Shown here: positions 2,281 through 50,217 of the stretch, one piece after another
Layout of the letters: every line of letters starts with the position of its first letter
How positions within the stretch are numbered: position 1 is the first letter of the stretch
Source: Aplysia californica
Taxonomy: Eukaryota
Assembly: GCF_000002075.1 (NCBI RefSeq)
Contig: NW_004797540.1
Coordinates: 712,404 to 764,794 of the forward strand
Direction of reading: 5' to 3'
DNA length: 52,391 nt
The notes under the pieces: model-generated
Seen by the model: only the letters and a program-made list of their open reading frames with translations
Database searches by the model: none
Told to the model about the DNA's origin: nothing
Made by a program: the position numbers and the translations under genes

Positions 2281-10025
<7,745 letters not shown>

Positions 10026-27200: not shown

Positions 27201-29773
27201 CGCCACTGCAGTGCCGGGTCGCGGCCGCGTGTTGGACTACAGCAGGTCGGATCTGTGGGCGTGTGGGACGATCGCGTACGAGATTCTCGGGGGAGAGAAC
27301 CCATTCTACCCCAGCCAGGACGGCGTGCGTCGACAGTTGAGTACCCGGGATTACACGGAGGAGGATTTGCCGGCACTGCCAGGTGTGTGTGTGGGGATTT
27401 GTGTTTATTTGTGTGTGTGGGTGTGTATAGGTTTGTGTGCATGTGTATGTGTAGGTTTGTGTGTGTGTGTGTGTGGGGGGGGGGGGGAGAGATTGGTGTT
27501 TGTGGATGTATTGGTGTGTGTGGGTTTGTGTATGTGTGTGTGTGAGTTTGTGTATTTGTGGGTGTGTATGTGTGTGTGTGCATGTATGTATGTTCATGTG
27601 AGTGTCTGCCCTCCTGTGTTTGTGGTGTAGTGAGTATGCTGTTTACCTTACGTACAAAAGGCGTGAGTGAAATTACCCATGGGAAACTCTAATGACTATC
27701 AACGTCTGGAAAACTTACTGTGGGTGGTTGGCGGGTGCTCTGGTGTGATTTGCTTCTTCTTTCCTATCAAACATAGATCTATCGTTGTTATCTCCCCTCC
27801 TTCTTTTTTATGTTTGTTACTCTCTTTTAACACATCTAATCTTCTGGCGCTCATATGACCTTATGCAGTTGCGAGCGCCGTAAAACCTCTACTAAAACAA
27901 AAACAAAATGAAAACTTACAAGATTGCTGTTCTGTGCCATAAATGTGTTAACAATAAAATCCCCTTGTATTTAAGCAACGACTTTCAATTGTATGTTTGA
28001 TGGAGATCTCTTACGAGAAAAATGTGGGCGGACGCACCGTTATTATTATAATTACTATTACTATTATTATTATGATGATGATTATTATTAATATTACTTT
28101 CTTCTTCTTCTTCTTCTTATTATATCATGATTAATTTTAGTATTATTATGATTATTTATATTTTTATTATTATTATCATGATGATGATGATGATGATTAT
28201 TATGTTATTATTATCATTATTATTTTATAACCCAATGGTCCATATGCTATGTTGTTGCAGCGTGTGTGCCGGAGGCGGTGCAGAGTCTGGTGTTTGCCCT
28301 GCTGGCCCGCGACCCACGGGAGGTGAGTGGGGAGACAGACTTAGCGCTGGTTCTTTTGGTTTTACGTCTGTGTTTTACGTCCGTGTTTTACGTCTGTGTT
28401 TTATGTCCGTGTTTTATGTCCGTGTTTTAGGTCAGTGTTTTATGTCCGTGTTTTATGTCCGTGTTTTACGTCTGTGTTTTATGTCCGTGTTTTATGTCTG
28501 TGTTTTATGTCCGTGTTTTATGTCTGTGTTTTAGGTCTGTGTTTTATGTCAGTTTTTTAGGTCAGTTTTACGGCGCTCAGAGACTCCCGCGAGGTGAGTG
28601 GGGAGACAAACTTAGCGCTGATTCTTTTTTTGTTCTGTCAGTGTTTTACGTTATTATTTTACAGTGGTCAGAGAGCCCCGGGAGGTGAATGGATTCTTTT
28701 GAATACTAATTCTTTTTGGTTTTTGCATCTCTCAACTCATATGAGAAAAGCCCACTGCCATTTGCGACTTTTTTCTTCTTTAAAAAAAAAAGTGATATGG
28801 GGGGGGGGGGGGGGGGGTTGATAGTTTTATTGGGGTTCCTTGTATATATAGGATGTTTCCTTATATTTTTTTGTCCGTCTGTAAGATTCTCTTGGTTTGA
28901 TTTGTTTTCAAAATCCAGTAATAACTGAGGAATCGATGAGGTTGTTTTCTTTTTTTCCGACATTGAAGACGTGAACATGGCATTATGGTTTTATAATAAC
29001 GCTTGTACGAAAAACAACAACAGGAATGTTAATATATAGACTGTCATGGTTATAGGTTCTAGCGAGAGTTTTTGTGGCGTAGTAGTTGTTGGCTGGTCTG
29101 CGTAATGGCAGCCTTTATATGGACGAGGGCTGTAGTTGTGGGTGGTTAGCAGGTGCCCTGGTGTGGTTTGCTCCTTTTTTCCTGTAAAAAAATCTGTCGT
29201 CTCTATCTCCCCTCCTTCTTTTTTATGTTTGTTACTCTCTTGTAACACCTCTAATCCTCGGCACTTATGTGACCTTATTGTGTTGCAAGTGCTGTAAATC
29301 TCTTATAAAAAGAACTTTAGTGACCTCTCTCCTCCTTCCTTCCTCCCCCCCTCTCTCTCCCCCTCCTCATCCTTCTCCTCCTCCCCCTCCCGTAGCGCCC
29401 CAGTCCCAGTGTCGCTGCCGCTGTTGTACAGATGGTCGTCCTGGCGTCGAGTCCCGCCAACGTGTCTGTCCCCAAAGCTTGCCGACCTCGTAGACAACCG
29501 CCAACCACCCATCCCCGCGGACACTGTGCCGGGCGCGAGCGGGGACGTGGGTACGGGAGGGGCGGTCCTGGCGAGGTCCCGCGTGCGGTGTTGGCGGCAC
29601 GGCAGGAGAGGGACCGGCTCCAGTGGGTTCTGGTTCAAAGCCTGGCCCTGCTGTGTCAGCTGACGTTTGGCCGAGACCGAGCCGAGGTGTGGGACGTGCC
29701 GGCCGTCATGAGGTTCCTCTTCCTGTCCCGCCTGACGCACGCAGACTTCAGACAGGCCCTGGCCTTCTTCTGA
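21266..29773 (+). CDS. PINK1: PTEN-induced kinase 1 (mitochondrial Ser/Thr kinase), 9 exons, ~617 aa
   Basis: Exons 21266-21700, 22322-22475, 22626-22791, 23917-24096, 25087-25256, 26537-26661, 27199-27382, 28261-28322, 29396-29773, phases consistent, 1854 nt. Basic MTS-like N-terminus, then LASELRRRAA, SGCEGAVY, LAVKAVFNY..SNAESLLREM, LPPHPNIV, PRRLDP..GRNKTLYVVM, HRDLKADN, DFGCCLA, GGN..LMAPE, DYSRSDLW and ENPFY. These are PINK1 hallmarks. Confidence 0.95.
23657..23817 (+). mobile_element. SINE-like family A copy
   Basis: Full length; TSD TGCTCAGGA. Confidence 0.88.
24190..24500 (-). mobile_element. RTE-type LINE 3' fragment whose last 33 bp are repeated 5 times
   Basis: Minus-strand WKQLEKDAQDR..WRNVVDGLCSTGS; unit AACTCCCAGTGGAGCACAGGCCATCTACAACAT x5 at ~24192-24356. 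Confidence 0.8.
25410..25790 (-). mobile_element. RTE-type LINE 3' fragment
   Basis: ILRIQWQDRVRNEEL..WRWMGH..WNP-like QRNPQGARGRGRPRETWRR. Confidence 0.85.
25818..26085 (-). mobile_element. RTE-type LINE 3' fragment with (TGA)n tail
   Basis: FLGHLNRHKGLE..GKIEGKRGRGRPRTTY, followed by TGATGATGA on the minus strand. Confidence 0.85.
26322..26500 (+). mobile_element. SINE-like family A copy
   Basis: Full length; TSD TTAGCGGAG/TTAGTGGAG. Confidence 0.88.
26890..27140 (+). mobile_element. Retroposon family B copy
   Basis: Matches 13388-13652; type B tail. Confidence 0.8.
27720..27905 (+). mobile_element. SINE-like family A copy, type B tail
   Basis: TSD GAAAACTTAC on both sides. Confidence 0.88.
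28359..28572. repeat. 13-bp tandem repeat, ~16 copies
   Basis: Unit GTTTTA(C/T)GTC(C/T)GT in PINK1 intron 8. Confidence 0.9.
29139..29312 (+). mobile_element. SINE-like family A copy
   Basis: Full-length match to the family. Confidence 0.85.
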
Positions 29774-33896: not shown

Positions 33897-34105
33897 NNNN
33901 NNNNNNNNNNNNNNNNNNNNNNNNNNNNNNNNNNNNNNNNNNNNNNNNNNNNNNNNNNNNNNNNNNNNNNNNNNNNNNNNNNNNNNNNNNNNNNNNNNNN
34001 NNNNNNNNNNNNNNNNNNNNNNNNNNNNNNNNNNNNNNNNNNNNNNNNNNNNNNNNNNNNNNNNNNNNNNNNNNNNNNNNNNNNNNNNNNNNNNNNNNNN
34101 NNNNN
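33897..34105. other. Assembly gap
   Basis: Run of N. Confidence 1.
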
Positions 34106-35419: not shown

Positions 35420-36679
35420 TTAGACACATCTCACATTGCTCAGGTCCTCAGTCTCCTCAGCTTTCTTTTCATCTTTTTCCTTTTCCGAGTCCATCTTTTC
35501 CTCAGCTCCTTCTTCTCCTCCTCCTTCTCCTGCTTGATTTCCTCCTTCAGCTCCGTCCTTCTGTCCATCCAGCTCAAACTGACCACTGGCCACTATTGGT
35601 CCAGCCAGCCCGGAGTCCTGTGTCCAAGCCTCGTTCTCAGCCAGGTCACGTGTCACCATGGGGCCCAGGTTGTCTTGGCTGAGGTAGAGAAGAAGGTAGG
35701 CGTCGGTGGGTAGGGATGGTCTCGCCGCTACCTGACTACGGCATGTCCCCATGGTCAGTCTGGACAGCCAAGTGAGAAAACTGACCACTGAGACCACGGT
35801 GAGAATCAAGAGATAGACGAGGAGGCCAGTGAACAACGCGTGATGGCCAAGCTGTGAGCGACGACTGGTGTCTGTTGGGGAGAACAGACATTGCATAACG
35901 TAATCGTGATGGTTTGACATTTGTCGAATGGTGAAAAAACAGGGTAAAATTTCCGACTGTTGCTGTATGGGTTGTCTTGAGCCAGTCTCAGCGAAGACCT
36001 GGGGCAGTATCCTTGTACTCAGAACGATGGACTCCAGAACTAGGACAAGGGAGCTGAAGAACTTGTAGAACAGATACGACACTGTGGCTCGATGTGGGCA
36101 GTCCTTGAGAGCTTTATCAACAGACTGGACCAGATCGGTGGTCACCTGACGTTTTGTGTCCGTCTGAAGGTTCTGGGCGTGGTCAGCTATGTGCAGAGTT
36201 TTCTCTATGTTGACCGGACAGAAAGTAAACATGAGGTACCAGACCAAGTGGGGTAACTTGATGAGTAGAGCAAAGACAAACAGAAGAAGTGGGGCGGTGA
36301 CGGAGGCGAAATGTCGGTGGTTGGTGTTGGGGGCGGGCGTGGAGGACACATTGGCTACGTCCTCGTCCACTTCAGACATTCTCACCAGCCTACGGCCGTG
36401 TGGGTTCCAAAGATTCTCTTCCAACGTCCCTCTTTGGAAGGCCTCAGTGTACCACTTAGAGCAGACGCTGTTGGCATACTCCACTTGGCTGGACTCAAAC
36501 TGGGCGGGGCACCAGCACTTTGCTTGGAAAGTCGGCGTTTCTTCTCCGGAGCTTATGACCAATGGGCTGGCAGCTAGTAACCACGTGACAAGAGACAGGA
36601 AGAAGAGGAGGCTCACGGTCCATGTGTGGACGTAACGGTCAGTTGAGTCCTCGCCCAAAGATCGTTGTAGGAAAGGCAT
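35420..36679 (-). CDS. Divergent innexin, copy A (419 aa, single coding ORF)
   Basis: Innexin pattern: EDSTDRY before TM1, CWCPAQF...YANSVC (two loop-1 Cys), P-LLLF..ALLIKLPHLVW (TM2), YLFYK (TM3), C-F-IRQMSN...QC (two loop-2 Cys), TM4, then DAYLLL..SQDNLG..VTRDL. An AG acceptor 38 nt upstream of the ATG keeps the frame open, so a small upstream exon may extend the N-terminus. Confidence 0.88.
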   Translation of the reverse strand: MPFLQRSLGEDSTDRYVHTWTVSLLFFLSLVTWLLAASPLVISSGEETPTFQAKCWCPAQFESSQVEYANSVCSKWYTEAFQRGTLEENLWNPHGRRLVRMSEVDEDVANVSSTPAPNTNHRHFASVTAPLLLFVFALLIKLPHLVWYLMFTFCPVNIEKTLHIADHAQNLQTDTKRQVTTDLVQSVDKALKDCPHRATVSYLFYKFFSSLVLVLESIVLSTRILPQVFAETGSRQPIQQQSEILPCFFTIRQMSNHHDYVMQCLFSPTDTSRRSQLGHHALFTGLLVYLLILTVVSVVSFLTWLSRLTMGTCRSQVAARPSLPTDAYLLLYLSQDNLGPMVTRDLAENEAWTQDSGLAGPIVASGQFELDGQKDGAEGGNQAGEGGGEEGAEEKMDSEKEKDEKKAEETEDLSNVRCV

Positions 36680-37589
36680 GTCGGTTCTAGTTTGACCACT
36701 TCCGCTGAAGTCAGATGCTGTAAAGGCAGACGTAGAACAAGGTCATAAATCAATGGAGAGTTGGAAAAAAACCCACACAGCTTTCTTCTTGTTTAAATCT
36801 TCTCAAAGTCAGCGTGTTGGAAACTGAATATGGCGAAATCATTATCTTCGGACCTCTGGCTGGGTTCTCCCAGATTTGTGTGCGTTGATTTCATGTCAAC
36901 ACTTCTGTGTGATGTCACAACCATACCCTGGTATGTTGATTCAATGTTAAAATTACTGCCGTGTAGGTTTTACAGCAATGTTTCAGACAAGGATTTTTTA
37001 AAAAGTTCTTACACTTTTAACTTGAAAAATGATGGCAAGAGCGCGTTATGGAGAAATGTGCAGAATTTACAGTAACATGTTCATACAGTCGATTTTGTTT
37101 CTCACAGTCTTTGTGAAAACCGCAAACACATCTCTCTATTTCAAGGGGCAATCGAAAGGAGAGGAAATGAAATGCAGTAAATATTTGGTTCCATTAACTG
37201 AGAAGTTTGTAAAACAGAGCAGCGTGCGAAGCGTGAAATGAGAAACGCGTAAACATTCTTCCAAGGGAATGGTTGTAAGAGATTACGTTTTGAGAAGGCA
37301 GCAACACATTGATGAGTAGGTAGGGAAAAATTTTAAACAGAAGTTCTAATGAGGAACAGACTTTTAAGGTAAATATTACCTATTACGAGCATTTCTTCCC
37401 ACCACCCCTAACATACTAGATGAAGAATTAAGATAAATTTGTTTATCATCGATAGAGGGTTCGGAAAAAATCTGTTTCTGAATTTTTTGCCTTGTCATGG
37501 TCCGCCATGATTGCAGAGAACCCACGTCATCACTGCTCTACTTGACGGCTATAAATAGCGACGCTTGGTATGGGAAATAATCCTCCTAC

Positions 37590-37860
37590 GTTTGTGGTGT
37601 AGTGGTTAGAGACGTCAGTGTGGCATGTAGAAGATATGGGTTCGACTCCTGGTTAGGGAAGATGTAATATTATTCTAAGGGACATCTCCGCATGTTTGTG
37701 ATCATGATGTAGCCCAGCCTGCCCCGATCTGCTCTGACAGGCAGGTACAACTGGCCAGACTCCTAAATAATCTACCATTAGTTCGTCCATCAATTTCTGA
37801 CCACACACGGAAGAATCAGTCTTGGGTCTGACCATGGCTAATGTATCTGCAGGGGTCAAT
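37590..37860 (+). mobile_element. tRNA-derived repeat in the innexin spacer (paralogues at ~42068-42340 and ~46606-46878)
   Basis: TGGTGTAGTGG A box and GGTTCGACTCC B box, with no closing acceptor stem. Confidence 0.65.
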
Positions 37861-38527
37861 ATTACATGAAGGGGGAAAAAGAAGAAATACGGATACTGAA
37901 AAATGATATTTAAGCTGTTTATTTTATAGTTGTCAAAACATTAATAAATGTGTTAATAAAGAAGAAATGATAGCAAATGAAATATTGTAAACCAAAAGCG
38001 AAGGTAACTACAATAACAGTCCAAACAAAACACTGATACTGAGATTAAAGAAATGAACTGTATCAAAGTTATGAGGAAAAATATTTTTATATGATTGGTT
38101 AAATATTAATATAATTAAAATACAATGTTATAAAATTTAAAAACAAATGGCCATTAATTGTAGTTAGCACTGTGAATGCTGAAATTCTCGTGCAGTAATA
38201 AAAAAATCGTGAATGGCCAAAAGTAAATACCGTTGAATTTGTTCTCACATGATTTTGTCAGGTATACAATATTACCCCCACATTATTATATTGTAAAGAA
38301 AATTGCCGATTTCGAAGCACTCATCTAGATCTACCAGTTTGATCCTTTGAAAGTGTAATAGGAACGACAGGTTATGACAGTGCTATCCGAGAAAGTCATT
38401 GAGTTCTATTTTGATTTTTCCATGTCGTTCTGGAAAGGAAGTAATGGCTTTCGTAATGTTGACACATCTTTGTTGATTATTACTTTGGACAAGATTTCTG
38501 AACCTATTGTGTGTTGACCTAGGGTCA

Positions 38528-38627
38528 NNNNNNNNNNNNNNNNNNNNNNNNNNNNNNNNNNNNNNNNNNNNNNNNNNNNNNNNNNNNNNNNNNNNNNNNN
38601 NNNNNNNNNNNNNNNNNNNNNNNNNNN
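38528..38627. other. Assembly gap (100 N) at the 42-bp minisatellite
   Basis: Run of N. The paralogous spacers indicate roughly 0.8 kb or more is missing, and extra gene copies could be hidden here. Confidence 1.
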
Positions 38628-38883
38628 ACAGAGAGGAAAAGAAAATACTGCAGTAGATGTCCATGCACTGGTTTAGTATCTCTCCAGAACATACATGTAT
38701 TTTAGCAATCTTTGTATTATTAAGGAAACCAATTCTTTTGTTCTTGATTTAAATTGATTTCCTTGTACTATGATGGTGACTAGACTAAGAGCAATGTTGA
38801 AAATGTTATCCCATCCAGCCGTTGTTGTTTTGAACAGATCAGAAAAAGAGATCTTAGAATGTCTCAAAGTCCATTTCCTTATA

Positions 38884-39674
38884 CAGTGGAGTCCACTTAT
38901 AACGAGTCCTGAAACAACGAGAAGTCTGTTATAAGGACACTGTTCTAAAACCCCGTTTGTTCTCGTTCTTTATCTTTGTAAATAAAATACTGCTATAGCG
39001 CAATCAGACCGTCACGCGAGTCGGTTTTAACGGAATATTGCTGCTGCTGTGCACAGCGCACAGACCAATTACATATTATAAAACCTTACCAGTTGAGAAA
39101 GTTGGTGATCCAGCGAAATTAAGAATGGGAGAGCCCACGCGAACCAACAGTGAAGGCCGAAGCGAATGAGTAGGGAGGGAGTGTCATGCGCAGACAAGCA
39201 GAACGCATCAGGTGATAGGCCTGCCCATTCTAGATTATCTAGGCATACCGTGCCTATCACTTCTCTGGTGCGGGATGGAGAGGTCACAATGCTGTGATAG
39301 ATGGAGTGAATGTGTGACGTGCGCAAGCAGACGCAACGCACCACAGGGTGTGGTGGGATGGGGGACAACACAGCGGGCGAGTTAGCCTAGAGCCAGAGCC
39401 CCTTCTTTCTGATCGCCAAGGCCGAGCTGTCAGCATTGCTAGTGATAGAGAAAGAAACCTAATTCGATTTTTTTATCAAGTAAGACCTACAGATCATGTT
39501 GAACAAATCATCATCAGGGGAAATACAAAAAGGAATAAACAGAACGCCAAACTCATAGATGAGATCTACTTTACTATTTCCCTTGAATTTATTACTGGAT
39601 CCCTTGTAACGAGAATCCTGCTATAACGGACATCGCACCGGTCCCTTCCCTCTCGTTATAACAGGATTCCACTG
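38884..39674. mobile_element. Non-autonomous Tc1/mariner-pogo-type DNA element (~790 bp)
   Basis: TIRs CAGTGGAGTCCACTTATAACGAG and (reverse complement) CAGTGGAATCCTGTTATAACGAG with a TA duplication. The empty site CCTTATAATACAACAG is visible in the paralogous spacers (~44087 and ~48718). Confidence 0.9.
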
Positions 39675-40029
39675 TAATACAACAGAATGGTTACCTTTGT
39701 GTGTCATTGAGGTAAACTGCAAATAAAACTTTTTGAGAATCGTGCCCTGAAAGATCTAAGTTGTTACAAAAGGTTTAAAAAATACAATGAAAATATAAAA
39801 ATGTTTTCTAATTATTATCTTTTGTTCGTTTGTAGAAATAAAATACTCTTCAAACAGTTGTTTAAAACTTTCTAAAACGAAACGGAATACTTTAGACCAA
39901 GTCAACTTTGTCAAGATCTACAGTCATGTCATCTTTCTTTTCATTTTTTTCCTTTTCCAAGTCCATCTTTTCCTCAGCTCCTTCATCTCCTCCTCCTTCT
40001 CCTGCTTGATCGCCTCCTTCAGCTCCGCC

Positions 40030-41151
40030 CTACTGTCCATCCAGCTCAAACTTACCACAGGCCACTATTGGTCCAGCCAGCCCGGAGTCCTGTGTCCAAG
40101 CCTCGTTCTCAGCCAGGTCACGTGTCACCATGGGACCCAGGTTGTCTTGGCTGAGGTAGAGAAGAAGGTAGGCGTCGGTGGGTAGGGATGGTCTCGCCGC
40201 TACCTGACTACGGCATGTCCCCATGGTCAGTCTGGACAGCCAGGTGAGAAAACTGACCACTGAGACCACGGTGAGAATCAAGAGATAGACGAGGAGGCCA
40301 GTGAACAACGCGTGATGGCCAAACTGTGAGCGATGACTGGTGTATGTTGGGGAGAACAGACATGGCAAGGTGTACTGGTGGACATTTGTAAGTGCTCGAA
40401 TCGGGAAAAAACAGGGTAAAATTTCCGACTGTTGCTGTATGGGTTGTCCTGAGCCAGTCTCAGCGAAGACCTGGGGCAGTATCCTTGTACTCAGAACGAT
40501 GGACTCCAGAACTAGGACAAGGGAGCTGAAGAACTTGTAGAACAGATACGACACTGTGGCTCGATGTGGGCAGTCTTTGAGAGCTTTGTCAACAGACTGG
40601 ACCAGATCAGTGGTTAGATGACGTTTTGTGTCCGTCTGAAGGTTCTGGGCGTGGTCAGCTGTGTGCAGAGTTTTCTCTATGTTGACCGGACAGAAAGTAG
40701 ACATGAGGTACCAGACCAAGTGGGGTAACTTGATGAGTAGAGCAAAGACAAACAGAAGAAGTGGGGCGGTGACGGAGGCGAAATGTCGGTGGTTGGTGTT
40801 GGGGGCGGGCGTGGAGGACACATTGGCTACGTCCTCGTCCACTTCAGGCATTGTCACCAGCCCACGGCCGTACGGGTTCCAAAGGTTCTCTTCCAACGTC
40901 CCTCTTTGGAAGGCCTCAGTGTACCACTTAGAGCAGACGCTGTTGGCATACTCCACTTGGCTGGACTCAAACTGGGCGGGGCACCAGCACTTTGCTTGGA
41001 AAGTCGGCGTTCCTTCTCCAGAGCTTATGACCAATGGGCTGGCAGCTAGTAACCACGTGACAAGAGACAGGAAGAAGAGGAGGCTCACGGTCCATGTGTG
41101 GACGTAACGGTCAGTTGAGTCCTCGCCCAAAGATCGTTGTAGGAAAGGCAT
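40030..41151 (-). CDS. Divergent innexin, copy B (373 aa; AAG>TAG removes the acidic C-terminal tail)
   Basis: Near-identical to copies A and C. The stop at 40030-40032 replaces a Lys codon. The ancestral tail stays in frame to a TAA at 39892-39894. Confidence 0.85.
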   Translation of the reverse strand: MPFLQRSLGEDSTDRYVHTWTVSLLFFLSLVTWLLAASPLVISSGEGTPTFQAKCWCPAQFESSQVEYANSVCSKWYTEAFQRGTLEENLWNPYGRGLVTMPEVDEDVANVSSTPAPNTNHRHFASVTAPLLLFVFALLIKLPHLVWYLMSTFCPVNIEKTLHTADHAQNLQTDTKRHLTTDLVQSVDKALKDCPHRATVSYLFYKFFSSLVLVLESIVLSTRILPQVFAETGSGQPIQQQSEILPCFFPIRALTNVHQYTLPCLFSPTYTSHRSQFGHHALFTGLLVYLLILTVVSVVSFLTWLSRLTMGTCRSQVAARPSLPTDAYLLLYLSQDNLGPMVTRDLAENEAWTQDSGLAGPIVACGKFELDGQ

Positions 41152-42981
41152 GTCGGTTCTAGTTTGACCACTTCCGCTGAAGTCAGATGCTGTAAAGGCA
41201 GACGTAGAACAAGGTCATAAATCAATGGAGAGTTGAAAAAAACCCCACACAGCTTTCTTCTTGTTTAAATCTTCTCAAAGTCAACGTGTTGGAAACTGAA
41301 TATGGCGAAATCATTATCTTCGGACCTCTGGCTGGGTTCTCCCAGAATTGTGTGCGTTGATTTCATGTCAACACTTCTGTGTGATGTCACAACCATACCC
41401 TGGTATGTTGATTCAATGTTAAAATTACTGCCATGTAGGTTTTACAGCAATGTTTCAGACAAGGATTTTTAAAAAGTTCTTACACTTTTAACTTGAAAAA
41501 TGATGGCAAGAGCGCGTTATGGAGAAATGTGCAGAATTTACAGTAACATGTTCATACAGTCGATTTTGTTTCTCACAGTCTTTGTGAAAACCGCAAACAC
41601 ATCTCTCTATTTCAAGGGGCAATCGAAAGGAGTGGAAATGAAATGCAGTAAATATTTGGTTCCATTAACTGAGAAGATTGTAAAACAGAAAAAAAGTAGC
41701 GTACGTGCGAAGCGTGAAATGAGAAACGCGTAAACATTCTTCAAAGGGAATGGTTGTAAGAGATTATGTTTTGAGAAGGCAGAAACAAATTGATGAGTAG
41801 GTAGGGAAAAGCGAACAGAAGTTCTAATGAGGAACAGACTTTTAAGGTAAATATTACCTATTACGAGCATTTCTTCCCACCACCCCTAACATACTAGATG
41901 AAGAATTAAAATAAATTTGTTTATCATCGATAGGGGGTTCGGAAAAAATCTGTTTCTGAATTTTTTGCCTTGTCAAGATCCACCATGATTTCAGAGAAGC
42001 CACGTCATCACTTCTCTACTTGACGGCTATAAATAGCGACGCTTGGTGTGGGAAATAATCCACCCACGTTTGTGGTGTAGTGGTTAGAGACGTCAGTGCG
42101 GCGCGTAGAAGATATGGGTTCGACTCCTGGTTAGGGAAGTTGTAAAATTATTCTAAGGGACATCTCTGCATGTTTGTGATCATGATGTAGCCCAGCCTGC
42201 CCCGATCTGCTCTGACAGGCAGGTAAAACTGGCCAGACTCCTGAATAATCTACCATTAGTTCGTCCATCAATGTCTGACCACACACGGAAGAATCAGTCT
42301 TGGGTCTGACCATGGCTAATGTATCTGCAGGGGTCAATATTACATGAAGTGGGAAAAAGAAGAAATACGGATACTGAAATATGAGGTTTAAACTGTTTAT
42401 TTTATAATTGTCAAAATATTATGAATAAATATGCAATCATTATATATGGAAGAAATGATGGTAAATGAAATATTTCAAACTAAAAGCGAAGGTAACTACA
42501 ATGACAGTCCAAACAAAACACTGGTACTGGGATTAAAGAAATGAACTGTATGAAAGTTATGAGGAAAAATATTTCTATACTTTGGTTAAATATTCATATA
42601 ATCAACAAGGTTATAAAATTCAAAAACAAATGGCCACTAATTGTAGTTAGGACTGTGAATGCTGACATTCTCGTGCAGTAATAAAGAATCATGAATGGTC
42701 AAAAGTAAATACTGATGAATTTGTTCCCACATGATTTTGTCAGGTATACGATATTACCCACAAATTGTAAAGAAAACTGCCGATTTCGAAGCACTCATCT
42801 AGATCTACCAGTTTGATCCTTTGAAAGTGTAATAGGAACGACAGGTTATGACAGTGCTATCCGAGAAAGTCATTGAGTTCTATTTTGATTTGTCCATGTC
42901 GTTCTGGAAAGGAAGTAATGGCTTTCGTAATGTTGACACATCTTTGTTGATTATTACTTTGGACAAGATTTCTGAACCTAT

Positions 42982-43236
42982 TGTGTGTTGACCTAGGGTC
43001 AGTGTAGTAAATATTGCCAGAACTGTGTGTTGACCTAGGGTCAGTGTAGTAAATATTGCCAGAACTGTGTGTTGACCTAGGGTCAGTGTTGTAAATATTG
43101 CCAGAACTGTGTGTTGACCTAGGGTCAGTGTTGTAAATATTGCCAGAACTGTGTGTTGACCTAGGGTCAGTGTAGTAAATATTGCCAGAACTGTGTGTTG
43201 ACCTAGGGTCAGTGTAGTAAATATTGCCAGAACTGT
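42982..43236. repeat. 42-bp minisatellite, 6 copies
   Basis: Unit ACTGTGTGTTGACCTAGGGTCAGTGTAGTAAATATTGCCAGA in direct tandem, no spacers. Confidence 0.95.
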
Positions 43237-44380
43237 ATGAACGGCCAGGGGCGAATAGTGGTAGTAAGCTCCGCGCCATTCCATGTAGCGAGCAAACGGC
43301 AGAGAGTGAAAGGAAAAGATAGCAGCCTGTCTCCAGATAATGTTATTATTGTTCAACCAGTGTGAATAATGGGAACACGAGTTTGTTCTATTTGATAAAA
43401 AAAAAAAAATGATATACATTTATAAATATACAAACAAATTTATTGAAAAGGAGATACAGAAAAAAAATGTCTTAAGAATAGATCTTGAGGCATTAGTCCA
43501 AGGGAGCTGTTGGTTAATTAAATAAGTTGTCCTTAGAGTCCAGCTTTTTGTACAATTAGATATAACATATTATGTCCTCGTGTTTTCTATTTCTTGTGTG
43601 TCTTTTAAGTGTCTCAATCATCTCACTGGACTCCCTCTCCCTCGCTATAATTCTTTGTCCACGTCGGTGATTATTTAACTGTACTTCTATAGGTGTCATT
43701 AAGTGACTATCATTCCCAAACTGTCATTTCCCCTCTACCAAGTCAATAAGTAATTCTGTGACTGTTATTCTTCAACCATTGTTCTTTAGCACACAATCTT
43801 TGTCTGTCTCCTTGAGATTGATTCACAGAATCGTGTGCACAGAGAGGAAAAGAAAATACTGCTGTAGATGTCCATGTACTGGTTTAGTATCTCTCCAGAA
43901 CATACGTGTATTTTAGCGACCTTTGTATAATTAAGGAAACCAATTAATTTGTTCTTGATTTAAATTGATCTCTTTGTACTATGATGGTGACTAGACTAAG
44001 AGCACTGTTGAAAAGGTTATCCCACCCAGCGGTCGTTGTTCTGGACAGTTCAGAAAAAAGGGATCTTAGAATGTCTAACTTCTTTTCCTTATAATACAAC
44101 AGAACGGTTCAACGTTCTTTGTCTATTAGCTAGATGAGGATATGATCTGTGTAAATTGAAGGTTTTGAGAATCGTGCCCCGAACGATCCAAGTTGTTACG
44201 ATTAGGTTAAAGATGCAACGAAAAGATGAAAATATTTTGTAAAGTTATCTTTTGTACGTTTGTGGAAATTAAATACGTTTCTAGTAATTCTTTAGAGCTT
44301 ACTAAAACGAAACGCAATATTTCCTTTCCAACATTAAGGAACCGACGGCTAATGCGACACTTTAGCGACTTTACACCATA

Positions 44381-45640
44381 TTAGACCAAGTCAACTTTGT
44401 CAAGGTCAACAGTCATGTCATCTTTCTTTTCATCTTTTTCCTTTTCCGAGTCCATCTTTTCCTCAGCTCCTTCATCTCCTCCTCCTTCTCCTGCTTGATC
44501 TTCTCCTTCAGCTCCGTCCTTCTGTCCATTCAGCTCAAACTGACCACTGGCCACTATTGATCCAGCCAGCCCGGAGTCCTGTGTCCAAGCCTCGTTCTCA
44601 GCCAGGTCACGTGTCACCAGGGGACCCAGGTTGTCTTGGCTGAGGTAGAGAAGAAGGTAGGCGTCGGTGGGTAGGGATGGTCTCGCCGCTACCTGACTAC
44701 GGCATGTCCCCATGGTCAGTCTGGACAGCCAAGTGAGAAAACTGACCACTGAGACCACGGTGAGAATCAAGAGATAGACGAGGAGGCCAGTGAACAACGC
44801 GTGATGGCCAAGCTGTGAGCGACGACTGGTGTGTGTTGGGGAGAACAGACATTGCAAGGTGTAGTGATGGACATTTTGCATTTGTCGAATCGGGTAAAAA
44901 CAGGGTAAAATTTCCGACTGTTGCTGTGTTGGTTGTCTTGAGCCAGTCTCAGCGAAGACCTGGGGCAGTATCCTTGTACTCAGAACGATGGACTCCAGAA
45001 CTAGGACAAGGGAGCTGAAGAACTTGTAGAACAGATACGACACAGTGGCTCGATGTGGGCAGTCCTTGAGAGCTTTGTCAACAGACTGGACCAGATCGGT
45101 GGTCACCTGACGTTTTGTGTCTGTCTGAAGGTTCTGGGCGTGGTCAGCTGTGTGCAGAGTTTTCTTTATGTTGACCGGACAGAAAGTAGACATGAGGTAC
45201 CAGACCAAGTGGGGTAACTTGATGAGTAGAGCAAAGACAAACAGAAGAAGTGGGGCGGTGACGGAGGCGAAATGTCGGTGGTTGGTGTTGGGGGCGGGCG
45301 TGGAGGACACATTGGCTACGTCCTCGTCCACTTCAGACATTCTCACCAGCCCACGGCTGTATGGGTTCCAGAGGTTCTCTCCCAACGTCCCTCTTTGGAA
45401 GGCCTCAGTGTACCACTTAGAGCAGACGCTGTTGGCATACTCCACATGGCTGGACTCAAACTGGGCGGGGCACCAGCACTTTGCTTGGAAAGTCGGCGTT
45501 TCTTCTCCAGAGCTTATGACCAATGGGCTGGCAGCTAGTAACCACGTGACAAGAGACAGGAAGAAGAGGAGGCTCACAGTCCATGTGTGGACGTAACGGT
45601 CAGTTGAGTCCTCGCCCAAAGATCGTTGTAGGAAAGGCAT
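44381..45640 (-). CDS. Divergent innexin, copy C (419 aa)
   Basis: Same motifs. The start is placed at the MPFLQ ATG (45640) by homology with the other copies, not at the ORF-track GTG at 45736. Confidence 0.88.
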   Translation of the reverse strand: MPFLQRSLGEDSTDRYVHTWTVSLLFFLSLVTWLLAASPLVISSGEETPTFQAKCWCPAQFESSHVEYANSVCSKWYTEAFQRGTLGENLWNPYSRGLVRMSEVDEDVANVSSTPAPNTNHRHFASVTAPLLLFVFALLIKLPHLVWYLMSTFCPVNIKKTLHTADHAQNLQTDTKRQVTTDLVQSVDKALKDCPHRATVSYLFYKFFSSLVLVLESIVLSTRILPQVFAETGSRQPTQQQSEILPCFYPIRQMQNVHHYTLQCLFSPTHTSRRSQLGHHALFTGLLVYLLILTVVSVVSFLTWLSRLTMGTCRSQVAARPSLPTDAYLLLYLSQDNLGPLVTRDLAENEAWTQDSGLAGSIVASGQFELNGQKDGAEGEDQAGEGGGDEGAEEKMDSEKEKDEKKDDMTVDLDKVDLV

Positions 45641-47483
45641 GTCGGTTCTAGTTTGACCACTTCCGCTGAAGTCAGATGCTGTAGAGGCAGACGTAAAACA
45701 AGGACAGAAATCAATGGAGAGTTGAAAAAAACCCACACAGCTTTATTCTTGTTTAAATCTTCTCAAAGTCAGCGTGTTGGAAACTGAATATGGCGAAATC
45801 ATTATCTTCGGACCTCTGGCTGGGTTCTCCCAGAATTGTTTGCGTTGATTTCATGTCAACACTTCTGTGTGATGTCACAACCATACCCTGGTATGTTGAT
45901 TCAATGTCAAAATTACTGCCATGTTGATTTTGCAACATTGTTTCAGACCAAGTTTTGCTAAGTTCTTACACTTTTAACTCTTTAGAAAATGATGGCAAGA
46001 GCTTGTTATGGAGAAATGTGCAGAATTTACAATAACATGTTCATACAGTCGATTCTCTTTCTCAGGCTTCTTTGTGGAAACCCCCAATATATCTCTCTAT
46101 TTCAAAGGGCGAATGAGAGGAGAGGAAATGAAATGCAGTAAATATTTGGCTCCATTAACTAAGAAGATTGTGAAACAGAAAAAAGTAGCGTACGTGCGAA
46201 GGGTGAAGTGAGAAACGCGCAAACATTTTCCAAAGGTAATAGTTTTAAGAGATGATTTTTGAAGAAGGCAGAAAAAAATCGATAAGTAGATTGGAGAAAG
46301 AGGGAAGAAAATGTCTAAAGAGAAACAGTTTTGTAAGGTGGATATATTACTTAGTACGTGCTATCCCTCCCTCCGCCCCCAACGTTCCAAAATGAAGAAT
46401 TAAGATACGTTTTGTTTACCATCGACAGGGAATAGAGAGCACAACAGGTTACAGAATGTTCAGTACATTGCTTGGGTCAGAAAAAAATGGTCGTTATGTT
46501 TTTTACTTTGTCATGATCCGCCATGATTTCAGAGAAGCCACGTCATCACTTCTCTACTTGACCGCTATAAATAGCGACGCTTGGTGTGGGAAATAATCCA
46601 CCCACGTTTGTGATGTAGTGGTTAGAGACGTCAGTGTGGCATGTAGAAGATATGGGTTCGACTCCTGGTTAGGGAAGTTGTACAATTATTCTAAGGGACA
46701 TCTCTGCATGTTTGTGATCATGATGTAGCCCAGCCTGCCCCGATCTGCTCTGACAGGCAGGTAATACTGGCCAGACTCCTGAATAATCTACCATTAGTTC
46801 GTCCATCAATGTCTGACCACACACGGAAGAATCAGTCTTGGGTCTGACCATGGCTAATGTATCTGCAGGGGTCAATATTACATGAAGGGGGAAAAAGAAG
46901 AAATACGGATACTGAAATATGATATTTAAGCTGTTTATTTTATAGTTGTCAAAACATAAATAAATGTGTTAATAAAGAAGAAATGATAGCAAATGAAATA
47001 TTGTAAACCAAAAGCGAAGGTAACTACAATAACAGTCCAAACAAAACACTGATACTGAGATTAAAGAAATGAACTGTATCAAAGTTATAAGGAAAAATAT
47101 TTTTATATGTTTGGTTAAATATTAATATAATTAAAATACAATGTTATAAAAACAAAACCAAATGGCCATTAATTGTAGTTAGGACTGTGAATGCTGAAAT
47201 TCTCGTGCAGTAGTTAAAAATCGTGAATGGCCAAAAGGAAATACTGTTGAATTTGTTCCCACATGATTTTGCCAGGCATACAACATTACCCACATATTGT
47301 AAAGAAAATTGCCGATTTCGAAGCACTCATCTAGATCCACTAGTTTGATCCTTTGAAAGTGTAATAGGAACGACAGGTTATGACAGTGCTATCCGAGAAA
47401 GTCATTGAGTTCTATTTTGATTTGTCCATGTCGTTCTGGCACATCTTTGTTGATTATTACTTTGGACAAGATTTCTGAACCGA

Positions 47484-47868
47484 TTGTGTGTTGACCTAGG
47501 GTCAGTGTAGTAAATATTGCCAGAACTGTGTGTTGACCTAAGGTCAGTGTAGTAAATATTGCCAGAACTGTGTGTTGACCTAGGGTCAGTGTAGTAAATA
47601 TTGCCAGAACTGTGTGTTGACCTAGGGTCAGTGTAGTAAATATTGCCAGAACTGTGTGTTGACCTAGGGTCAGTGTAGTAAATATTGCCAGAACTGTGTG
47701 TTGACCTAAGGTCAGTGTAATAAATATTGCCAGAACTGTGTGTTGACCTAGGGTCAGTGTAGTAGATATTGCCAGAACTGTGTGTTGACCTAGGGTCAGT
47801 GTAATAAATATTGCCAGAACTGTGTGTTGACCTAGGGTCAGTGTAGTAAATATTGCCAGAACTGTGTG
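47484..47868. repeat. 42-bp minisatellite, 9 copies
   Basis: Same unit as 42982-43236. A third array begins at ~38508 and runs into the assembly gap. Confidence 0.95.
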
Positions 47869-48945
47869 AAAGGCCAGGGGTGAATAGTGGTAGGAAGCTC
47901 CGCGCCATTCCATGTAGCGAGCAAACGACAGAGAGTGAAAGGAAAAGATAGCAGCCTGTTTCCAGATAATGTTATTATTGTTCAACCAGTGTAAATAATG
48001 GGAACACGAGTTTGTTCTATTTGATCAAATGAAAAATATGATATACATTTATAAATATACAAACAAATTTATTGAAAAGGAGATACAGAAAAAAAATGTC
48101 TTAAGAATAGATCTTGAGGCATTAGTCCAAGGGAGCTGTTGGTTAATTAAATAAGTTGTCCTTAGAGTCCAGCTTTTTGTAGAATTAGATATAACGTATT
48201 ATGTCCTCATCTTTTCTATTTCTTGTGTGTCTTTTAAGTGTCTCAATCATCTCACTGGACTCCCTCTCCCTCGCTATAATTCTTTGTCCACGTCGGTGAT
48301 TATTTAACTGTACTTCTATAGGTGTCATTAAGTGACTATCATTCCCAAACTGTCATTTTCCCTCTACCACGTCTATAAGTAATTCTGTGACTGTCATTCT
48401 TCAACCATTGTTCTTTAGCACACAATCTTCGTCTGTCTCCTCGAGATTGATTCACAGAATCGTGTGCACAGAGAGGAAAAGAAAATACTGCTGTAGATGT
48501 CCATGTACTGGTTTAGTATCTCTCCAGAACATACGTGTATTTTAGCGATCTTTGTATTATTAAGGAAATCAATTCATTTGTTCTTGATTTAAATTGATAT
48601 TTCTGTACTATGATGGTGACTAGACTAAGAGCAATGTTGAAAAGGTTATCCCACCCAGCGGTCGTTGTTTTTGGACAGATCAGAACAAGAGATCTTAGAA
48701 TGTCTCAAAGTCCATTTCCTTATAATACAACAGAATGGTTACCTTTGTGTGTCATTGAGGTAAACTGTGCAAATAAAACTTTTTGAGAATCGTGCCCAGA
48801 GCGATCTAAATTGTTACAAATAGATTAAAAAATACAATGAAAATATAAAAATGTTTTCTAATTATTATCTTTTGTTCGTTTGTAGAAATAAAATACACTT
48901 CAAACAGTTGTTTAAAACTTTCTAACTAAAACGAAACGGAATACT

Positions 48946-50217
48946 TTAGGCCAAGTCAACTTTGTCAAGATCTACAGTCATGTCATCTTTCTTTTCATCT
49001 TTTTCCTTTTCCGAGTCCATCTTTTCCTCAGCTCCTTCACCTCCTCCTCCTTCTCCTGCTTGATCGCCTTCTTCAGCTCCGTCCTTCTGTCCATCCAGCT
49101 CAAACTGACCACTGGCCACTATTGGTCCAGCCAGCCCGGAGTCCTGTGTCCAAGCCTCGTTCTCAGCCAGGTCACGTGTCACCATGGGACCCAGGTTGTC
49201 TTGGCTGAGGTAGAGAAGAAGGTAGGCGTCGGTGGGTAGGGATGGTCTCGCCGCTACCTGACTACGGCATGTCCCCATGGTCAGTCTGGACAGCCAAGTG
49301 AGAAAACTGACCACTGAGACCACGGTGAGAATTAAGAAATAGACGAGGAGGCCAGTGAACAACGCGTGATGGCCAAGCTGTGAGCGACGACTGGTGTCTG
49401 TTGGGGAGAACAGACATTGCAGAAAGTAATCGTGATGGTTTGACAATTGTCGAATGGTGAAATAACAGGGTAAAACTTCCGACTGTTGCTGTATGGGTTG
49501 TCTTGAGCCAGTCTCAGCGAAGACCTGGGGCAGTATCCTTGTGCTCAGAACGATGGACTCCAGAACTAGGACAAGGGAGCTGAAGAACTTGTAGAACAGA
49601 TACGACACTGTGGCTCGATGTGGGCAGTCCTTGAGAGCTTTGTCAACAGACTGGACCAGATCGGTGGTCACCTGACGTTTTGTGTCTGTCTGAAGGTTCT
49701 GGGCGTGGTCAGCTGTGTGCAGAGTTTTCTCTATGTTGACCGGACAGAAAGTAGACATGAGGTACCAGACCAAGTGGGGTAACTTGATGAGTAGAGCAAA
49801 GATGAACAAAACTAGTGGGGCGGTGACGGAGGCGAAATATTGGTCGCTGCTGTCCAAATTAAACGTCTCAGACCCATTTGTTGTTACGTAATAGTCCAGA
49901 ATAGAGCTGTCTTCTGGTTTGAAGGAGACCAAGCTAGTAAGAAGATCTCTTAGCCCCCTCAGTGTCCCTCTCTTGAAGGCGTCGCTGTACCACGTAGAAC
50001 AGAAGGCGTTAGAATATTCCACTTGGCTGGACTCAAACTGAGCGGGGCACCAGCACTTTGCTTGGAAAGGCGGCGTTCCTTCTCCAAAACTTATGACCAA
50101 TGGGCTGGCAGCTAGTAACCACGTGACAAGAGACAGGAAGAAGAGGAGGCTCACGGTCCATCTGTGGACGTAACGGTCAGTTGAGTCCTCGCCTAAAGAT
50201 CGTTGTTGGAAAGGCAT
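48946..50217 (-). CDS. Divergent innexin, copy D (423 aa; distinct extracellular loop 1)
   Basis: Same innexin motifs. The loop-1 segment after the second Cys is largely unalignable with copies A-C. Confidence 0.88.
   Translation of the reverse strand: MPFQQRSLGEDSTDRYVHRWTVSLLFFLSLVTWLLAASPLVISFGEGTPPFQAKCWCPAQFESSQVEYSNAFCSTWYSDAFKRGTLRGLRDLLTSLVSFKPEDSSILDYYVTTNGSETFNLDSSDQYFASVTAPLVLFIFALLIKLPHLVWYLMSTFCPVNIEKTLHTADHAQNLQTDTKRQVTTDLVQSVDKALKDCPHRATVSYLFYKFFSSLVLVLESIVLSTRILPQVFAETGSRQPIQQQSEVLPCYFTIRQLSNHHDYFLQCLFSPTDTSRRSQLGHHALFTGLLVYFLILTVVSVVSFLTWLSRLTMGTCRSQVAARPSLPTDAYLLLYLSQDNLGPMVTRDLAENEAWTQDSGLAGPIVASGQFELDGQKDGAEEGDQAGEGGGGEGAEEKMDSEKEKDEKKDDMTVDLDKVDLA

What the first reader, a model, noticed from the sequence alone, without database searches (positions are those of the whole stretch)
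35420..50217. Tandem innexin array with a hypervariable extracellular loop-2 hairpin: candidate docking or recognition code
Seen: four near-identical genes whose differences cluster in the 16 residues between the two loop-2 cysteines. A (35888-35941) C-FFTIRQMSNHHDYVMQ-C; B (40360-40413) C-FFPIRALTNVHQYTLP-C; C (44849-44902) C-FYPIRQMQNVHHYTLQ-C; D (49414-49467) C-YFTIRQLSNHHDYFLQ-C. Pairwise differences are A/B 9, A/C 7, A/D 4, B/C 6, B/D 8 and C/D 8 of 16. The next ~75 residues (TM4 through QDSGLAG) have only two variable sites across all copies. There are no indels, and C, IR, N, H, Y and C are invariant. Established: innexin and connexin extracellular loops form the hemichannel docking surface, and connexin E2 influences heterotypic compatibility. 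Inference: the channel body is homogenised while the exposed tip is diversified. That pattern would fit cell-cell recognition (selective coupling, self/non-self) or escape from a pathogen or toxin. I do not know of a described innexin locus behaving this way.
Basis: partly seen in the sequence, partly recalled or inferred. Interest (0 to 1): 0.85.

Follow-up and report, generated by a model that had tools for sequence, protein, structure and literature searches.

The report
Sea-hare innexin array, divergent outer loops
Four neighbouring, already catalogued channel genes of the sea hare Aplysia keep copying each other's sequence, except for two short stretches that face the outside of the cell; this is a real and tidy example of a familiar evolutionary pattern, and it is not evidence of a recognition code.

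Summary
Four minus-strand innexin genes (Pfam PF00876) lie in tandem with a ~4.5 kb period. Their amino-acid differences are strongly concentrated in the 16 residues between the two EL2 cysteines (10 of 16 columns against 16 of 292 elsewhere, p = 2e-8).

Corrections and additions:
- **Known genes.** They are Aplysia californica pannexin 7 (D), pannexin 8 (B), innexin 8b (C) and innexin 8c (A) in GenBank.
- **Other differences.** Copy D also has a completely replaced EL1 block. Copy B carries a real premature stop. Copy A has its own C-terminus.
- **Not hypervariable between individuals.** Independent GenBank sequences and four public runs reproduce each copy's hairpin.
- **Old or imported block.** Between the two hairpin classes (A/D against B/C), silent sites are about as diverged as replacement sites: dS is 0.7 to saturated, against 0.04–0.07 in the gene body. 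The block is therefore old or imported and sits in a homogenised background. It is not a recent adaptive burst.
- **Exchange between units.** Mosaic runs support it (p ≤ 2e-4).
- **Selection.** Within classes replacements dominate (16.5 N to 1.5 S). That is significantly above the body but not above neutrality.
- **Assembly gap.** It lies in an intergenic minisatellite and touches no gene.

A docking code is untested, and a conserved EL1 glycosylation sequon argues mildly against it. Earlier notes of this scan describe comparable conversion mosaics in other arrays of this genome.

The parts
35420..36679 (-). Copy A, 419 aa, matching GenBank innexin 8c (WEY19499) at all but a few residues. It is the last gene of the array. 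Its last 13 codons (35420-35461) are unique because homology with the other units ends there.
40030..41151 (-). Copy B, 373 aa, matching GenBank pannexin 8 (AAX24147 / NP_001191596 / WEY19497) at all but four residues. TAG at codon 374 (40030-40032) removes the acidic tail. The old frame stays open, without indels, down to 39892.
44381..45640 (-). Copy C, 419 aa, matching GenBank innexin 8b (WEY19498) at all but a few residues.
48946..50217 (-). Copy D, 423 aa, matching GenBank pannexin 7 / innexin-7 (AAX24146, NP_001191616, WEX25351) at all but a few residues. It is the first gene of the array. Its upstream sequence is unrelated to that of the others beyond about -140.
35888..35941 (-). EL2 beta-hairpin of A (C247 to C264), class I.
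40360..40413 (-). EL2 beta-hairpin of B, class II (closer to the subfamily consensus).
44849..44902 (-). EL2 beta-hairpin of C, class II. Exact-match contigs are present in runs X1, X11 and X19.
49414..49467 (-). EL2 beta-hairpin of D, class I.
49837..49965 (-). Replaced distal EL1 block of D. It is unalignable with 36311-36427, 40783-40899 and 45272-45388 in A, B and C. It keeps the single N-x-S sequon (N114-G-S against N110-V-S). No other copy of this block exists in the genome.
45641..45680 (-). 38-nt 5' UTR piece preceded by a splice acceptor (pyrimidine tract, then CAG). The corresponding stretch is identical in all four copies, with exon starts at 36717, 41189, 45678 and 50255. In run X19 coverage stops exactly at 45678 and continues into a 54-nt leader that is not in the window.
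42982..43236 (.). 42-bp minisatellite (6 copies) in the B-C spacer.
47485..47868 (.). 42-bp minisatellite (9 copies) in the C-D spacer.
38528..38627 (.). Assembly gap in the A-B spacer. It starts inside the same minisatellite, is intergenic, and by homology hides about 0.8-1.0 kb.
38884..39674 (.). A ~790-bp dispersed repeat inserted only in the A-B spacer. The genome has at least 1841 candidate copies, 90-93% identical.

Best explanation
This is a four-gene tandem array of a heterobranch-specific, divergent innexin clade in Aplysia californica. The gene order on the minus strand is D = pannexin 7, C = innexin 8b, B = pannexin 8, A = innexin 8c. The units, spacers included, exchange sequence by gene conversion or unequal crossing-over, which keeps the transmembrane and cytoplasmic body about 98% identical. 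Two short blocks have stayed outside this homogenisation, or were brought in from a source that is no longer present. One is the 16-residue E2 beta-hairpin, in two old classes (A/D and B/C) with a few extra replacements inside each class. The other is the distal part of EL1 in D. Both blocks face the outside of the cell. In the INX-6 structure, the hairpin is the plug and the E1 lobes are the socket of hemichannel docking. The variable hairpin residues fall on one face and the tip, and the other face (I251, N256, H258, Y260) is fixed. Each paralog's hairpin is stable between individuals. The most likely reading is that the paralogs are functionally differentiated at their extracellular surface, and that selection against conversion across these blocks preserves the difference. 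A secondary effect may help: a 25-35% mismatched patch itself hinders conversion tracts. Shown here: the family, the tandem structure, the mosaic, the heterogeneity of silent divergence, the stability between samples, and the hairpin structure. Inferred: selection as the cause, and any role in docking or ligand contact.
For: Family and fold: PF00876 in all four copies. The AF2 model has four TM helices and an E2 hairpin (strands 243-253 and 256-268). The best structural matches are INX-6 5h1q and 5h1r, then pannexin 1 and LRRC8. INX-6 has the same spacing of 16 residues between C248 and C265, and its hairpin docks into a cavity formed by the E1 lobes. Clustering: Fisher p = 1.7e-8. Mosaic: long odd-one-out runs for every pair of units, p <= 2e-4, and segment-wise switches of the closest pair. 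Deep block: hairpin dS is 0.7 to saturated between classes against 0.036-0.068 in the body. That is 4.5-7 silent differences where 0.3-0.7 are expected (P 5e-4 to 8e-7). All nine AD|BC informative sites in the alignable part of the gene lie in codons 250-261. D's EL1 block has dS of about 1.05-1.1. No ectopic donor exists in the assembly, and the next paralogs are only 36-38% identical. Within classes, N:S is 16.5:1.5 in EL2 against 21:20 in the body, Fisher p = 0.001-0.005. Stability and reality of the copies: independent GenBank entries reproduce each hairpin, with one L-to-P change in WEX25351, while differing at scattered other sites. The C and B hairpins co-occur in X1, X3 and X11, and X11 shows all types. 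Recurrence: two other young duplicate pairs of the same clade also concentrate replacements in the disulfide-bounded EL1 and EL2 segments (dN 0.135 and 0.195 against 0.047 and 0.035).
Against: dN/dS in the hairpin is not significantly above 1 (binomial p 0.06-0.20). With four sequences and demonstrated recombination, site models would be unreliable. Relaxed constraint on a solvent-exposed strand face, combined with a mismatch barrier to conversion, could give the same picture without any functional differentiation. The hairpin is also one of the more variable segments across the whole clade. No orthologous array from another species was found, so trans-specific persistence of the two classes is untested. 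I could not obtain model coordinates, so exposure is inferred from strand periodicity and was not measured. The function of these proteins is unknown, and the classical YYQW motif is absent.
Confidence: 0.6

Rival explanations
1. Neutral mosaic. The hairpin and the distal EL1 are weakly constrained surface segments. They diverged or were patched once, and their high mismatch density then blocks conversion tracts. They persist as islands without any functional meaning.
For: Loop omega is near 1 and not significantly above it. The same positions are the variable ones across the clade. The distal EL1 is predicted to be disordered, with pLDDT below 50 for residues 92-119. Earlier notes of this scan (s1-728372, s1-725197) report conversion mosaics in other arrays of this genome.
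Against: Both deep islands fall in outward-facing blocks. The variable hairpin residues sit on one strand face while the other face is invariant. The single N-x-S sequon is kept inside a fully replaced EL1. The within-class N:S ratio is significantly above that of the body. Hairpins are fixed between individuals while scattered sites elsewhere vary.
Confidence: 0.25
2. One reading: ongoing diversifying selection (an arms race or self/non-self code) that drives rapid point substitution at the tip on an otherwise homogenised gene.
For: Within classes, A-D has 4 replacements and 0 silent changes, and B-C has 8.5 and 1.5. B-C hairpin replacements exceed the neutral expectation (P = 0.002) if the block is as young as its flanks. 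Omega is 2.7 in the loops of pair L009/L010.
Against: Between classes, silent sites are saturated, which point selection does not predict. No allelic variation of the hairpins was seen across independent clones and four runs. There are only four copies and no further variants in the genome.
Confidence: 0.1
3. Assembly artefact: B and C, or other copies, are haplotypes or collapsed or mis-joined repeats placed in tandem.
For: There is an assembly gap inside the array next to a minisatellite. The assembly is a short-read-era scaffold. X3 may be the sample the genome was assembled from, so it is not independent.
Against: Four distinct sequences were deposited independently under four names. The B and C hairpins co-occur in three of three samples examined, and all types are present in X11. 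A and D have unique outer flanks. The spacers differ in minisatellite length and in a transposon insertion.
Confidence: 0.04

Closest known systems
C. elegans INX-6 gap-junction channel (PDB 5H1Q / 5H1R; PMC5146279)
   Same: Same Pfam family and fold, and the best Foldseek hit. Two E1-E2 disulfide cysteine pairs. The E2 beta-hairpin is bounded by cysteines 16 residues apart. PxxxW motif in TM2.
   Different: About 15% identity. EL1 is far longer (~80 residues) with a disordered, sequon-bearing distal part. There is an extra Cys57. There is no YYQW motif. Whether the Aplysia proteins dock at all is unknown.
Molluscan 'pannexin-like' innexins and vertebrate pannexins (Limax group 7, PMC8049302)
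   Same: A long EL1 with a conserved N-glycosylation sequon. In pannexins, glycosylation there is reported to hinder docking and to favour single-membrane channels.
   Different: The Aplysia 7/8 clade keeps 16 residues between the EL2 cysteines, whereas Limax innexin 11 has 12. I found no mention of pannexin 7 or 8 in the text of that paper. Glycosylation has not been shown.
Concerted evolution with selectively retained islands in other tandem membrane-protein families (for example chicken FFAR2 paralogs PMC4453067, CC chemokine receptors PMC2880985, cichlid RH2a opsins PMC3514295)
   Same: Gene conversion homogenises the bodies of tandem paralogs while short segments at ligand- or partner-facing sites stay divergent.
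   Different: Here the family is an innexin and the retained islands are the two elements of a channel's outer mouth. Positive selection has not been demonstrated. I saw only the titles and abstracts of these papers in the search list and did not read them.
Connexin E2 as a determinant of heterotypic docking compatibility
   Same: A disulfide-bounded second extracellular loop decides which hemichannels can pair. This comes from established knowledge and from the remark in PMC8049302 that the sequence between the Cys residues is critical for forming functional intercellular channels.
   Different: Connexins are an unrelated sequence family. No equivalent experiment exists for any innexin hairpin in the papers I searched.

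Membership tests
Innexin / pannexin superfamily (Pfam PF00876) | Full-length match to the family HMM above the gathering score | tested here: met
   Scores 56.8-63.3 bits against a cut-off of 25, profile positions 2-327 of 333, in all four copies.
Innexin / pannexin superfamily (Pfam PF00876) | Four transmembrane helices, an N-terminal helix, and a fold like INX-6 or PANX1 | tested here: met
   AF2 model with pLDDT 76. Top Foldseek hits are INX-6 (E 5e-7), then PANX1 and LRRC8.
Innexin / pannexin superfamily (Pfam PF00876) | Two conserved cysteines in each extracellular loop | tested here: met
   C55 and C73 in EL1 (plus an extra C57) and C247 and C264 in EL2. They are invariant across 25 clade members.
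Innexin / pannexin superfamily (Pfam PF00876) | P-x-x-x-W hinge motif in TM2 | tested here: met
   P143-H-L-V-W147 in all copies. The motif is as defined in PMC8049302.
Classical gap-junction-forming innexins | YYQW(V) motif at the start of TM2 (feature recalled from own knowledge) | tested here: not met
   The corresponding stretch reads H-F-A-S-V-T-A-P.
Classical gap-junction-forming innexins | Forms intercellular channels by head-to-head docking | not testable with these tools
   This needs paired-cell electrophysiology or electron microscopy.
Pannexin-like, non-junctional channels | N-glycosylation on an extracellular loop | tested here: inconclusive
   A single sequon, N110-V-S (A, B, C) or N114-G-S (D), lies in EL1 and is kept despite the replaced surroundings. 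Occupancy of the site is unknown.
Tandem array under concerted evolution with retained islands | Mosaic of exchanged tracts between units | tested here: met
   The runs permutation test gives p <= 2e-4 for all three pairs. Segment-wise divergence switches are seen.
Tandem array under concerted evolution with retained islands | Islands much older than their flanks at silent sites | tested here: met
   dS is 0.7 to saturated (hairpin) and ~1.05 (EL1 of D), against 0.04-0.07 in the body.
Tandem array under concerted evolution with retained islands | Positive or diversifying selection in the islands (omega > 1) | tested here: inconclusive
   Within-class omega is infinite (A-D) and 1.6-2.4 (B-C). 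N:S is above the body (p 0.001-0.005) but not above neutrality (p 0.06-0.2).

The most novel reading that the evidence does not exclude
The E2 hairpin (plug) and the distal E1 lobe (socket) act as a paralog-specific lock-and-key. It would decide which of the four otherwise identical channels can dock with which. Cells expressing different members would then be electrically insulated from one another while sharing the same pore and gating machinery. This code would be actively protected from gene conversion, and the same principle would operate in the other young duplicates of this heterobranch innexin clade.
Probability: 0.15. Interest if true: 0.8.

Novelty: new member of a known kind. Interest (0 to 1): 0.45.

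Why it matters
What determines which innexin hemichannels can pair is an open question. For connexins the second extracellular loop is known to matter, but for innexins there is only the INX-6 structure. This array is a natural experiment: four channels with essentially one body differ almost only in the hairpin plug, and in one case in the E1 lobe. It comes from an animal whose identified neurons and electrical synapses are classic preparations. Swapping 16 residues between these paralogs would test directly whether the innexin hairpin encodes docking or ligand specificity. As an evolutionary pattern it is a clean but unsurprising case of conversion with retained islands. The genes themselves are already in the databases.

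Tried and rejected
- **Close orthologues outside A. californica.** Two word-index searches found only the Aplysia proteins. A full HMMER scan of 1.8 billion representatives gave only 46 hits, the nearest at 35-40% identity. Segment-wise comparison between species was therefore impossible.
- **Ectopic donors.** No other copy of the class II hairpin or of D's EL1 block exists in the assembly. Import from an extant paralog is unsupported.
- **Direct sequence match to solved structures.** A single-sequence search found none. A clade profile reached INX-6 only weakly (E 1e-4). The fold search was needed.
- **The 54-nt leader spliced onto copy C in run X19.** It was not found in the window or the genome as a 30-, 22-, 20- or 18-mer. 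The idea of one shared 5' exon feeding all four genes could not be tested.
- **Genomic context of clade representatives.** The look-up of encoding contigs gave nothing for P0003 or P0005.
- **Literature.** No paper on Aplysia pannexin 7/8 or innexin 8b/8c, and none linking innexins with gene conversion or positive selection.
- **Steps not run.** PAML/HyPhy site models are not installed, and four recombining sequences would make them unreliable. Complex prediction was not used because a docking test needs 16 subunits.

Full report
**What is there.**
The window is part of an Aplysia californica scaffold. The genome has 927 Mb in 4332 contigs, and the encoded proteins match NCBI entries named for this species at all but a few residues. 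Between 35420 and 50217 lie four minus-strand ORFs with a period of about 4.5 kb:
- A, 35420-36679, 419 aa
- B, 40030-41151, 373 aa
- C, 44381-45640, 419 aa
- D, 48946-50217, 423 aa

All four match Pfam Innexin PF00876 over the full length. GenBank already holds them as pannexin 7 / innexin-7 (D), pannexin 8 (B), innexin 8b (C) and innexin 8c (A). The genome has no further close copies, and the next paralogs are 36-38% identical. The clade is small and lineage-restricted. A full HMMER scan gave only 46 hits. The named ones are Aplysia pannexins 9 and 10, innexin 15, and uncharacterised proteins of Elysia, Physella and Biomphalaria.

**The assembly gap.**
The gap 38528-38627 lies in the A-B spacer, 1.85 kb from A's start codon and 1.4 kb from B's stop. 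Its left edge is 20 nt into a 42-bp minisatellite that the B-C and C-D spacers also carry, with 6 and 9 units. Its right edge corresponds to 43839 and 48468 in those spacers. By homology about 0.8-1.0 kb is hidden behind the nominal 100 N. No reading frame is involved, and I did not try to recover the letters. The A-B period looks normal only because that spacer also carries a ~790-bp dispersed repeat at 38884-39674, which the other spacers lack.

**Check of the observation.**
The hairpin coordinates, the four 16-residue strings, the six pairwise counts, the invariant residues and the absence of indels are all correct. Among A, B and C, 10 of 16 hairpin columns vary against 16 of 292 elsewhere (Fisher p = 1.7e-8).

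- D carries a wholly replaced distal EL1. Codons ~85-123 (49837-49965) are unalignable at the DNA level, with a net +4 residues.
- A's last 13 codons are unique because the repeat ends inside its tail.
- B has TAG at codon 374, which removes the acidic tail. The 373-aa GenBank pannexin 8 ends at the same place, so the stop is real.

**Are the copies real and expressed?**
Independent GenBank sequences reproduce each copy's hairpin exactly, apart from one L-to-P change in WEX25351. They differ from the window at about 3 to 8 scattered residues elsewhere.

I laid Logan contigs of four runs from different samples on copy C.
- Exact C-hairpin contigs are present in X1, X11 and X19.
- A B-type contig is present in X1, X3 and X11.
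- A/D-type markers appear in X11 (two contigs) and X19.
- The D-type EL1 shows up as a 109-113-nt replaced stretch in X3, X11 and X19.

X1 has only 93 million letters, yet it covers the gene at word depths of 34-66. For a 927-Mb genome that means RNA or an enriched library, which is my inference. X1 shows no D-type contig, which hints at different expression of D, although contigs cannot prove absence. Misassembled haplotypes are therefore unlikely (about 4%).

The coding regions have no introns, but the genes do. A pyrimidine tract plus CAG lies 38 nt before each ATG, and that stretch is identical in all four copies. In X19 coverage stops exactly there (45678) and continues into a 54-nt leader. 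I could not find that leader in the window or the genome.

**How the pattern arose.**
Nei-Gojobori counts are as follows.

| Region and comparison | dS | dN | Omega |
|---|---|---|---|
| Gene body | 0.036-0.068 | 0.011-0.021 | about 0.3-0.4 |
| Hairpin, class A/D against class B/C | 0.7 to saturated | 0.31-0.48 | 0.1-0.7 |
| D's EL1 block against A, B, C | about 1.05-1.1 | about 0.52 | about 0.5 |

In the between-class hairpin comparison there are 4.5-7 silent differences where 0.3-0.7 are expected (P 5e-4 to 8e-7). All nine AD|BC informative sites in the alignable part of the gene lie in codons 250-261. The two islands have different groupings: D against A, B, C in EL1, and A, D against B, C in EL2.

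Across the whole units, spacers included, the identity of the odd copy out changes in long runs. A equals B for 31 consecutive sites around 37450-36900. A equals C for 16 sites at 39885-38823. B equals C for 11 sites. Each run gives permutation p <= 2e-4.

The locus is therefore a recombination mosaic in which two short blocks are much older than their surroundings, or were imported from a source no longer in the assembly. It does not support a recent burst of adaptive point changes at the tip.

Within classes the picture is different:
- A-D has 4-5 replacements and no silent change.
- B-C has 8.5-11.5 replacements and 1.5 silent changes.
- Pooled, N:S is 16.5:1.5 against 21:20 in the body (Fisher p = 0.001-0.005).
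- Against strict neutrality this is not significant (binomial p = 0.06-0.20).

Selection is therefore suggested but not demonstrated.

**Structure.**
The AF2 model (pLDDT 76) has four TM helices and an E2 beta-hairpin, with strands 243-253 and 256-268 and the tip at 254-255. Its best structural matches are INX-6, then pannexin 1 and LRRC8.

In INX-6 the hairpin is bounded by C248 and C265, the same 16-residue spacing as here. It inserts into a cavity of the opposed hemichannel formed by the inner and outer E1 lobes and two neighbouring hairpins. With the modelled register, residues 249, 251, 256, 258 and 260 share one face and are invariant or conservative (F/Y). Residues 248, 250, 257, 259, 261 and 263, together with tip residues 254 and 255, form the variable face. 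Apart from the conservative F/Y at 248 and M/L at 254, these positions hold nearly all the radical changes. This follows from strand periodicity.

D's replaced block follows the second E1 cysteine, which is roughly where the E1 outer lobe lies in INX-6. Here, however, EL1 is about 80 residues long and its distal part is predicted to be disordered.

Each protein has a single N-x-S/T sequon. It lies in EL1 and is kept at the aligned position even inside D's replaced block (this agrees with scan note s1-766810). A long, glycosylated EL1 is the pannexin-like condition, which in pannexins is reported to hinder docking (PMC8049302). These proteins may therefore act as single-membrane channels, in which case the hairpin would be an exposed rim and not a docking plug.

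**Recurrence.**
Two other young duplicate pairs of the same clade also concentrate replacements in the disulfide-bounded EL1 segment and the E2 hairpin. They are L009/L010, which is pannexin-10-like and 94% identical, and L007/L008, which is 93% identical.

| Pair | Loop dN | dN elsewhere | Loop omega | Omega elsewhere |
|---|---|---|---|---|
| L009/L010 | 0.135 | 0.047 | 2.7 | 0.55 |
| L007/L008 | 0.195 | 0.035 | 0.58 | 0.36 |

Neither loop omega is significantly above 1. Fast change of the outer mouth after duplication thus seems to be a property of the clade.

**Verdict.**
Homogenisation with retained outward-facing islands is real. 'Hypervariable' is wrong at the population level. The main hairpin dimorphism is old, not newly evolved. 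Function is open.

The phenomenon is a familiar kind: concerted evolution with islands at partner-facing sites. Earlier notes of this scan describe similar mosaics in a receptor-gene array (s1-728372) and a TLR pair (s1-725197) of this same genome, which I did not check. I found no paper that reports it for innexins. Its value is as a ready-made chimera series for testing what the innexin E2 hairpin specifies.

Noticed in passing
window 45641-45680 (and the equivalent stretch upstream of 36679, 41151 and 50217); run X19: All four genes share an identical splice acceptor 38 nt before the ATG. In run X19 the transcript continues into a 54-nt leader that is absent from the window and, as exact 18- and 20-mers (and the 30-mer with up to 2 mismatches), from the whole assembly. 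The leader could be an unassembled 5' exon, a strain or species difference (X19 is labelled as another organism), or something else.
   Followed up: partly
window 38884-39674: A ~790-bp dispersed repeat is inserted only in the A-B spacer. The genome has at least 1841 candidate copies, 90-93% identical. It has no Pfam match and is probably a non-autonomous transposable element. It could serve as a relative time marker for the array.
   Followed up: partly
G000 C92:505-560 kb (L009/L010) and C962:86-180 kb (L007/L008): Two further young duplicate pairs of the same innexin clade, 93-94% identical at the DNA level, also concentrate their replacements in the EL1 inter-cysteine segment and the EL2 hairpin. 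The blastn matches run in opposite orientation. L008's ORF runs into an assembly gap.
   Followed up: partly
window 39892-40032: Behind B's TAG stop the old reading frame stays open for 46 codons without indels. The B-specific changes there are almost all replacements, as expected for a tail that is no longer translated.
   Followed up: yes
window 5651-6001 (+): An exon-like ORF matches the GAPDH C-terminal domain (PF02800, E 7e-15). It may be part of a GAPDH gene or a pseudogene upstream of the array.
   Followed up: partly
window 27211-27630 (+), flanked by GT/CA microsatellites at 27381-27605: A short stretch has a weak protein-kinase match (PF00069, E 0.007, below the cut-off). It is probably one exon of a kinase gene.
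   Followed up: partly
window 16032-16748 (-): A 238-aa ORF ends in a hydrophobic stretch and has no Pfam match.
   Followed up: partly
window 33897-34105: A second assembly gap lies about 1.3 kb beyond the 3' end of copy A, so what follows the array on that side is not continuous in the assembly.
   Followed up: no
window 24192-24357 and 28359-28563: Two further minisatellites (33 bp x 5 and 13 bp x 16) lie in the region before the array.
   Followed up: no
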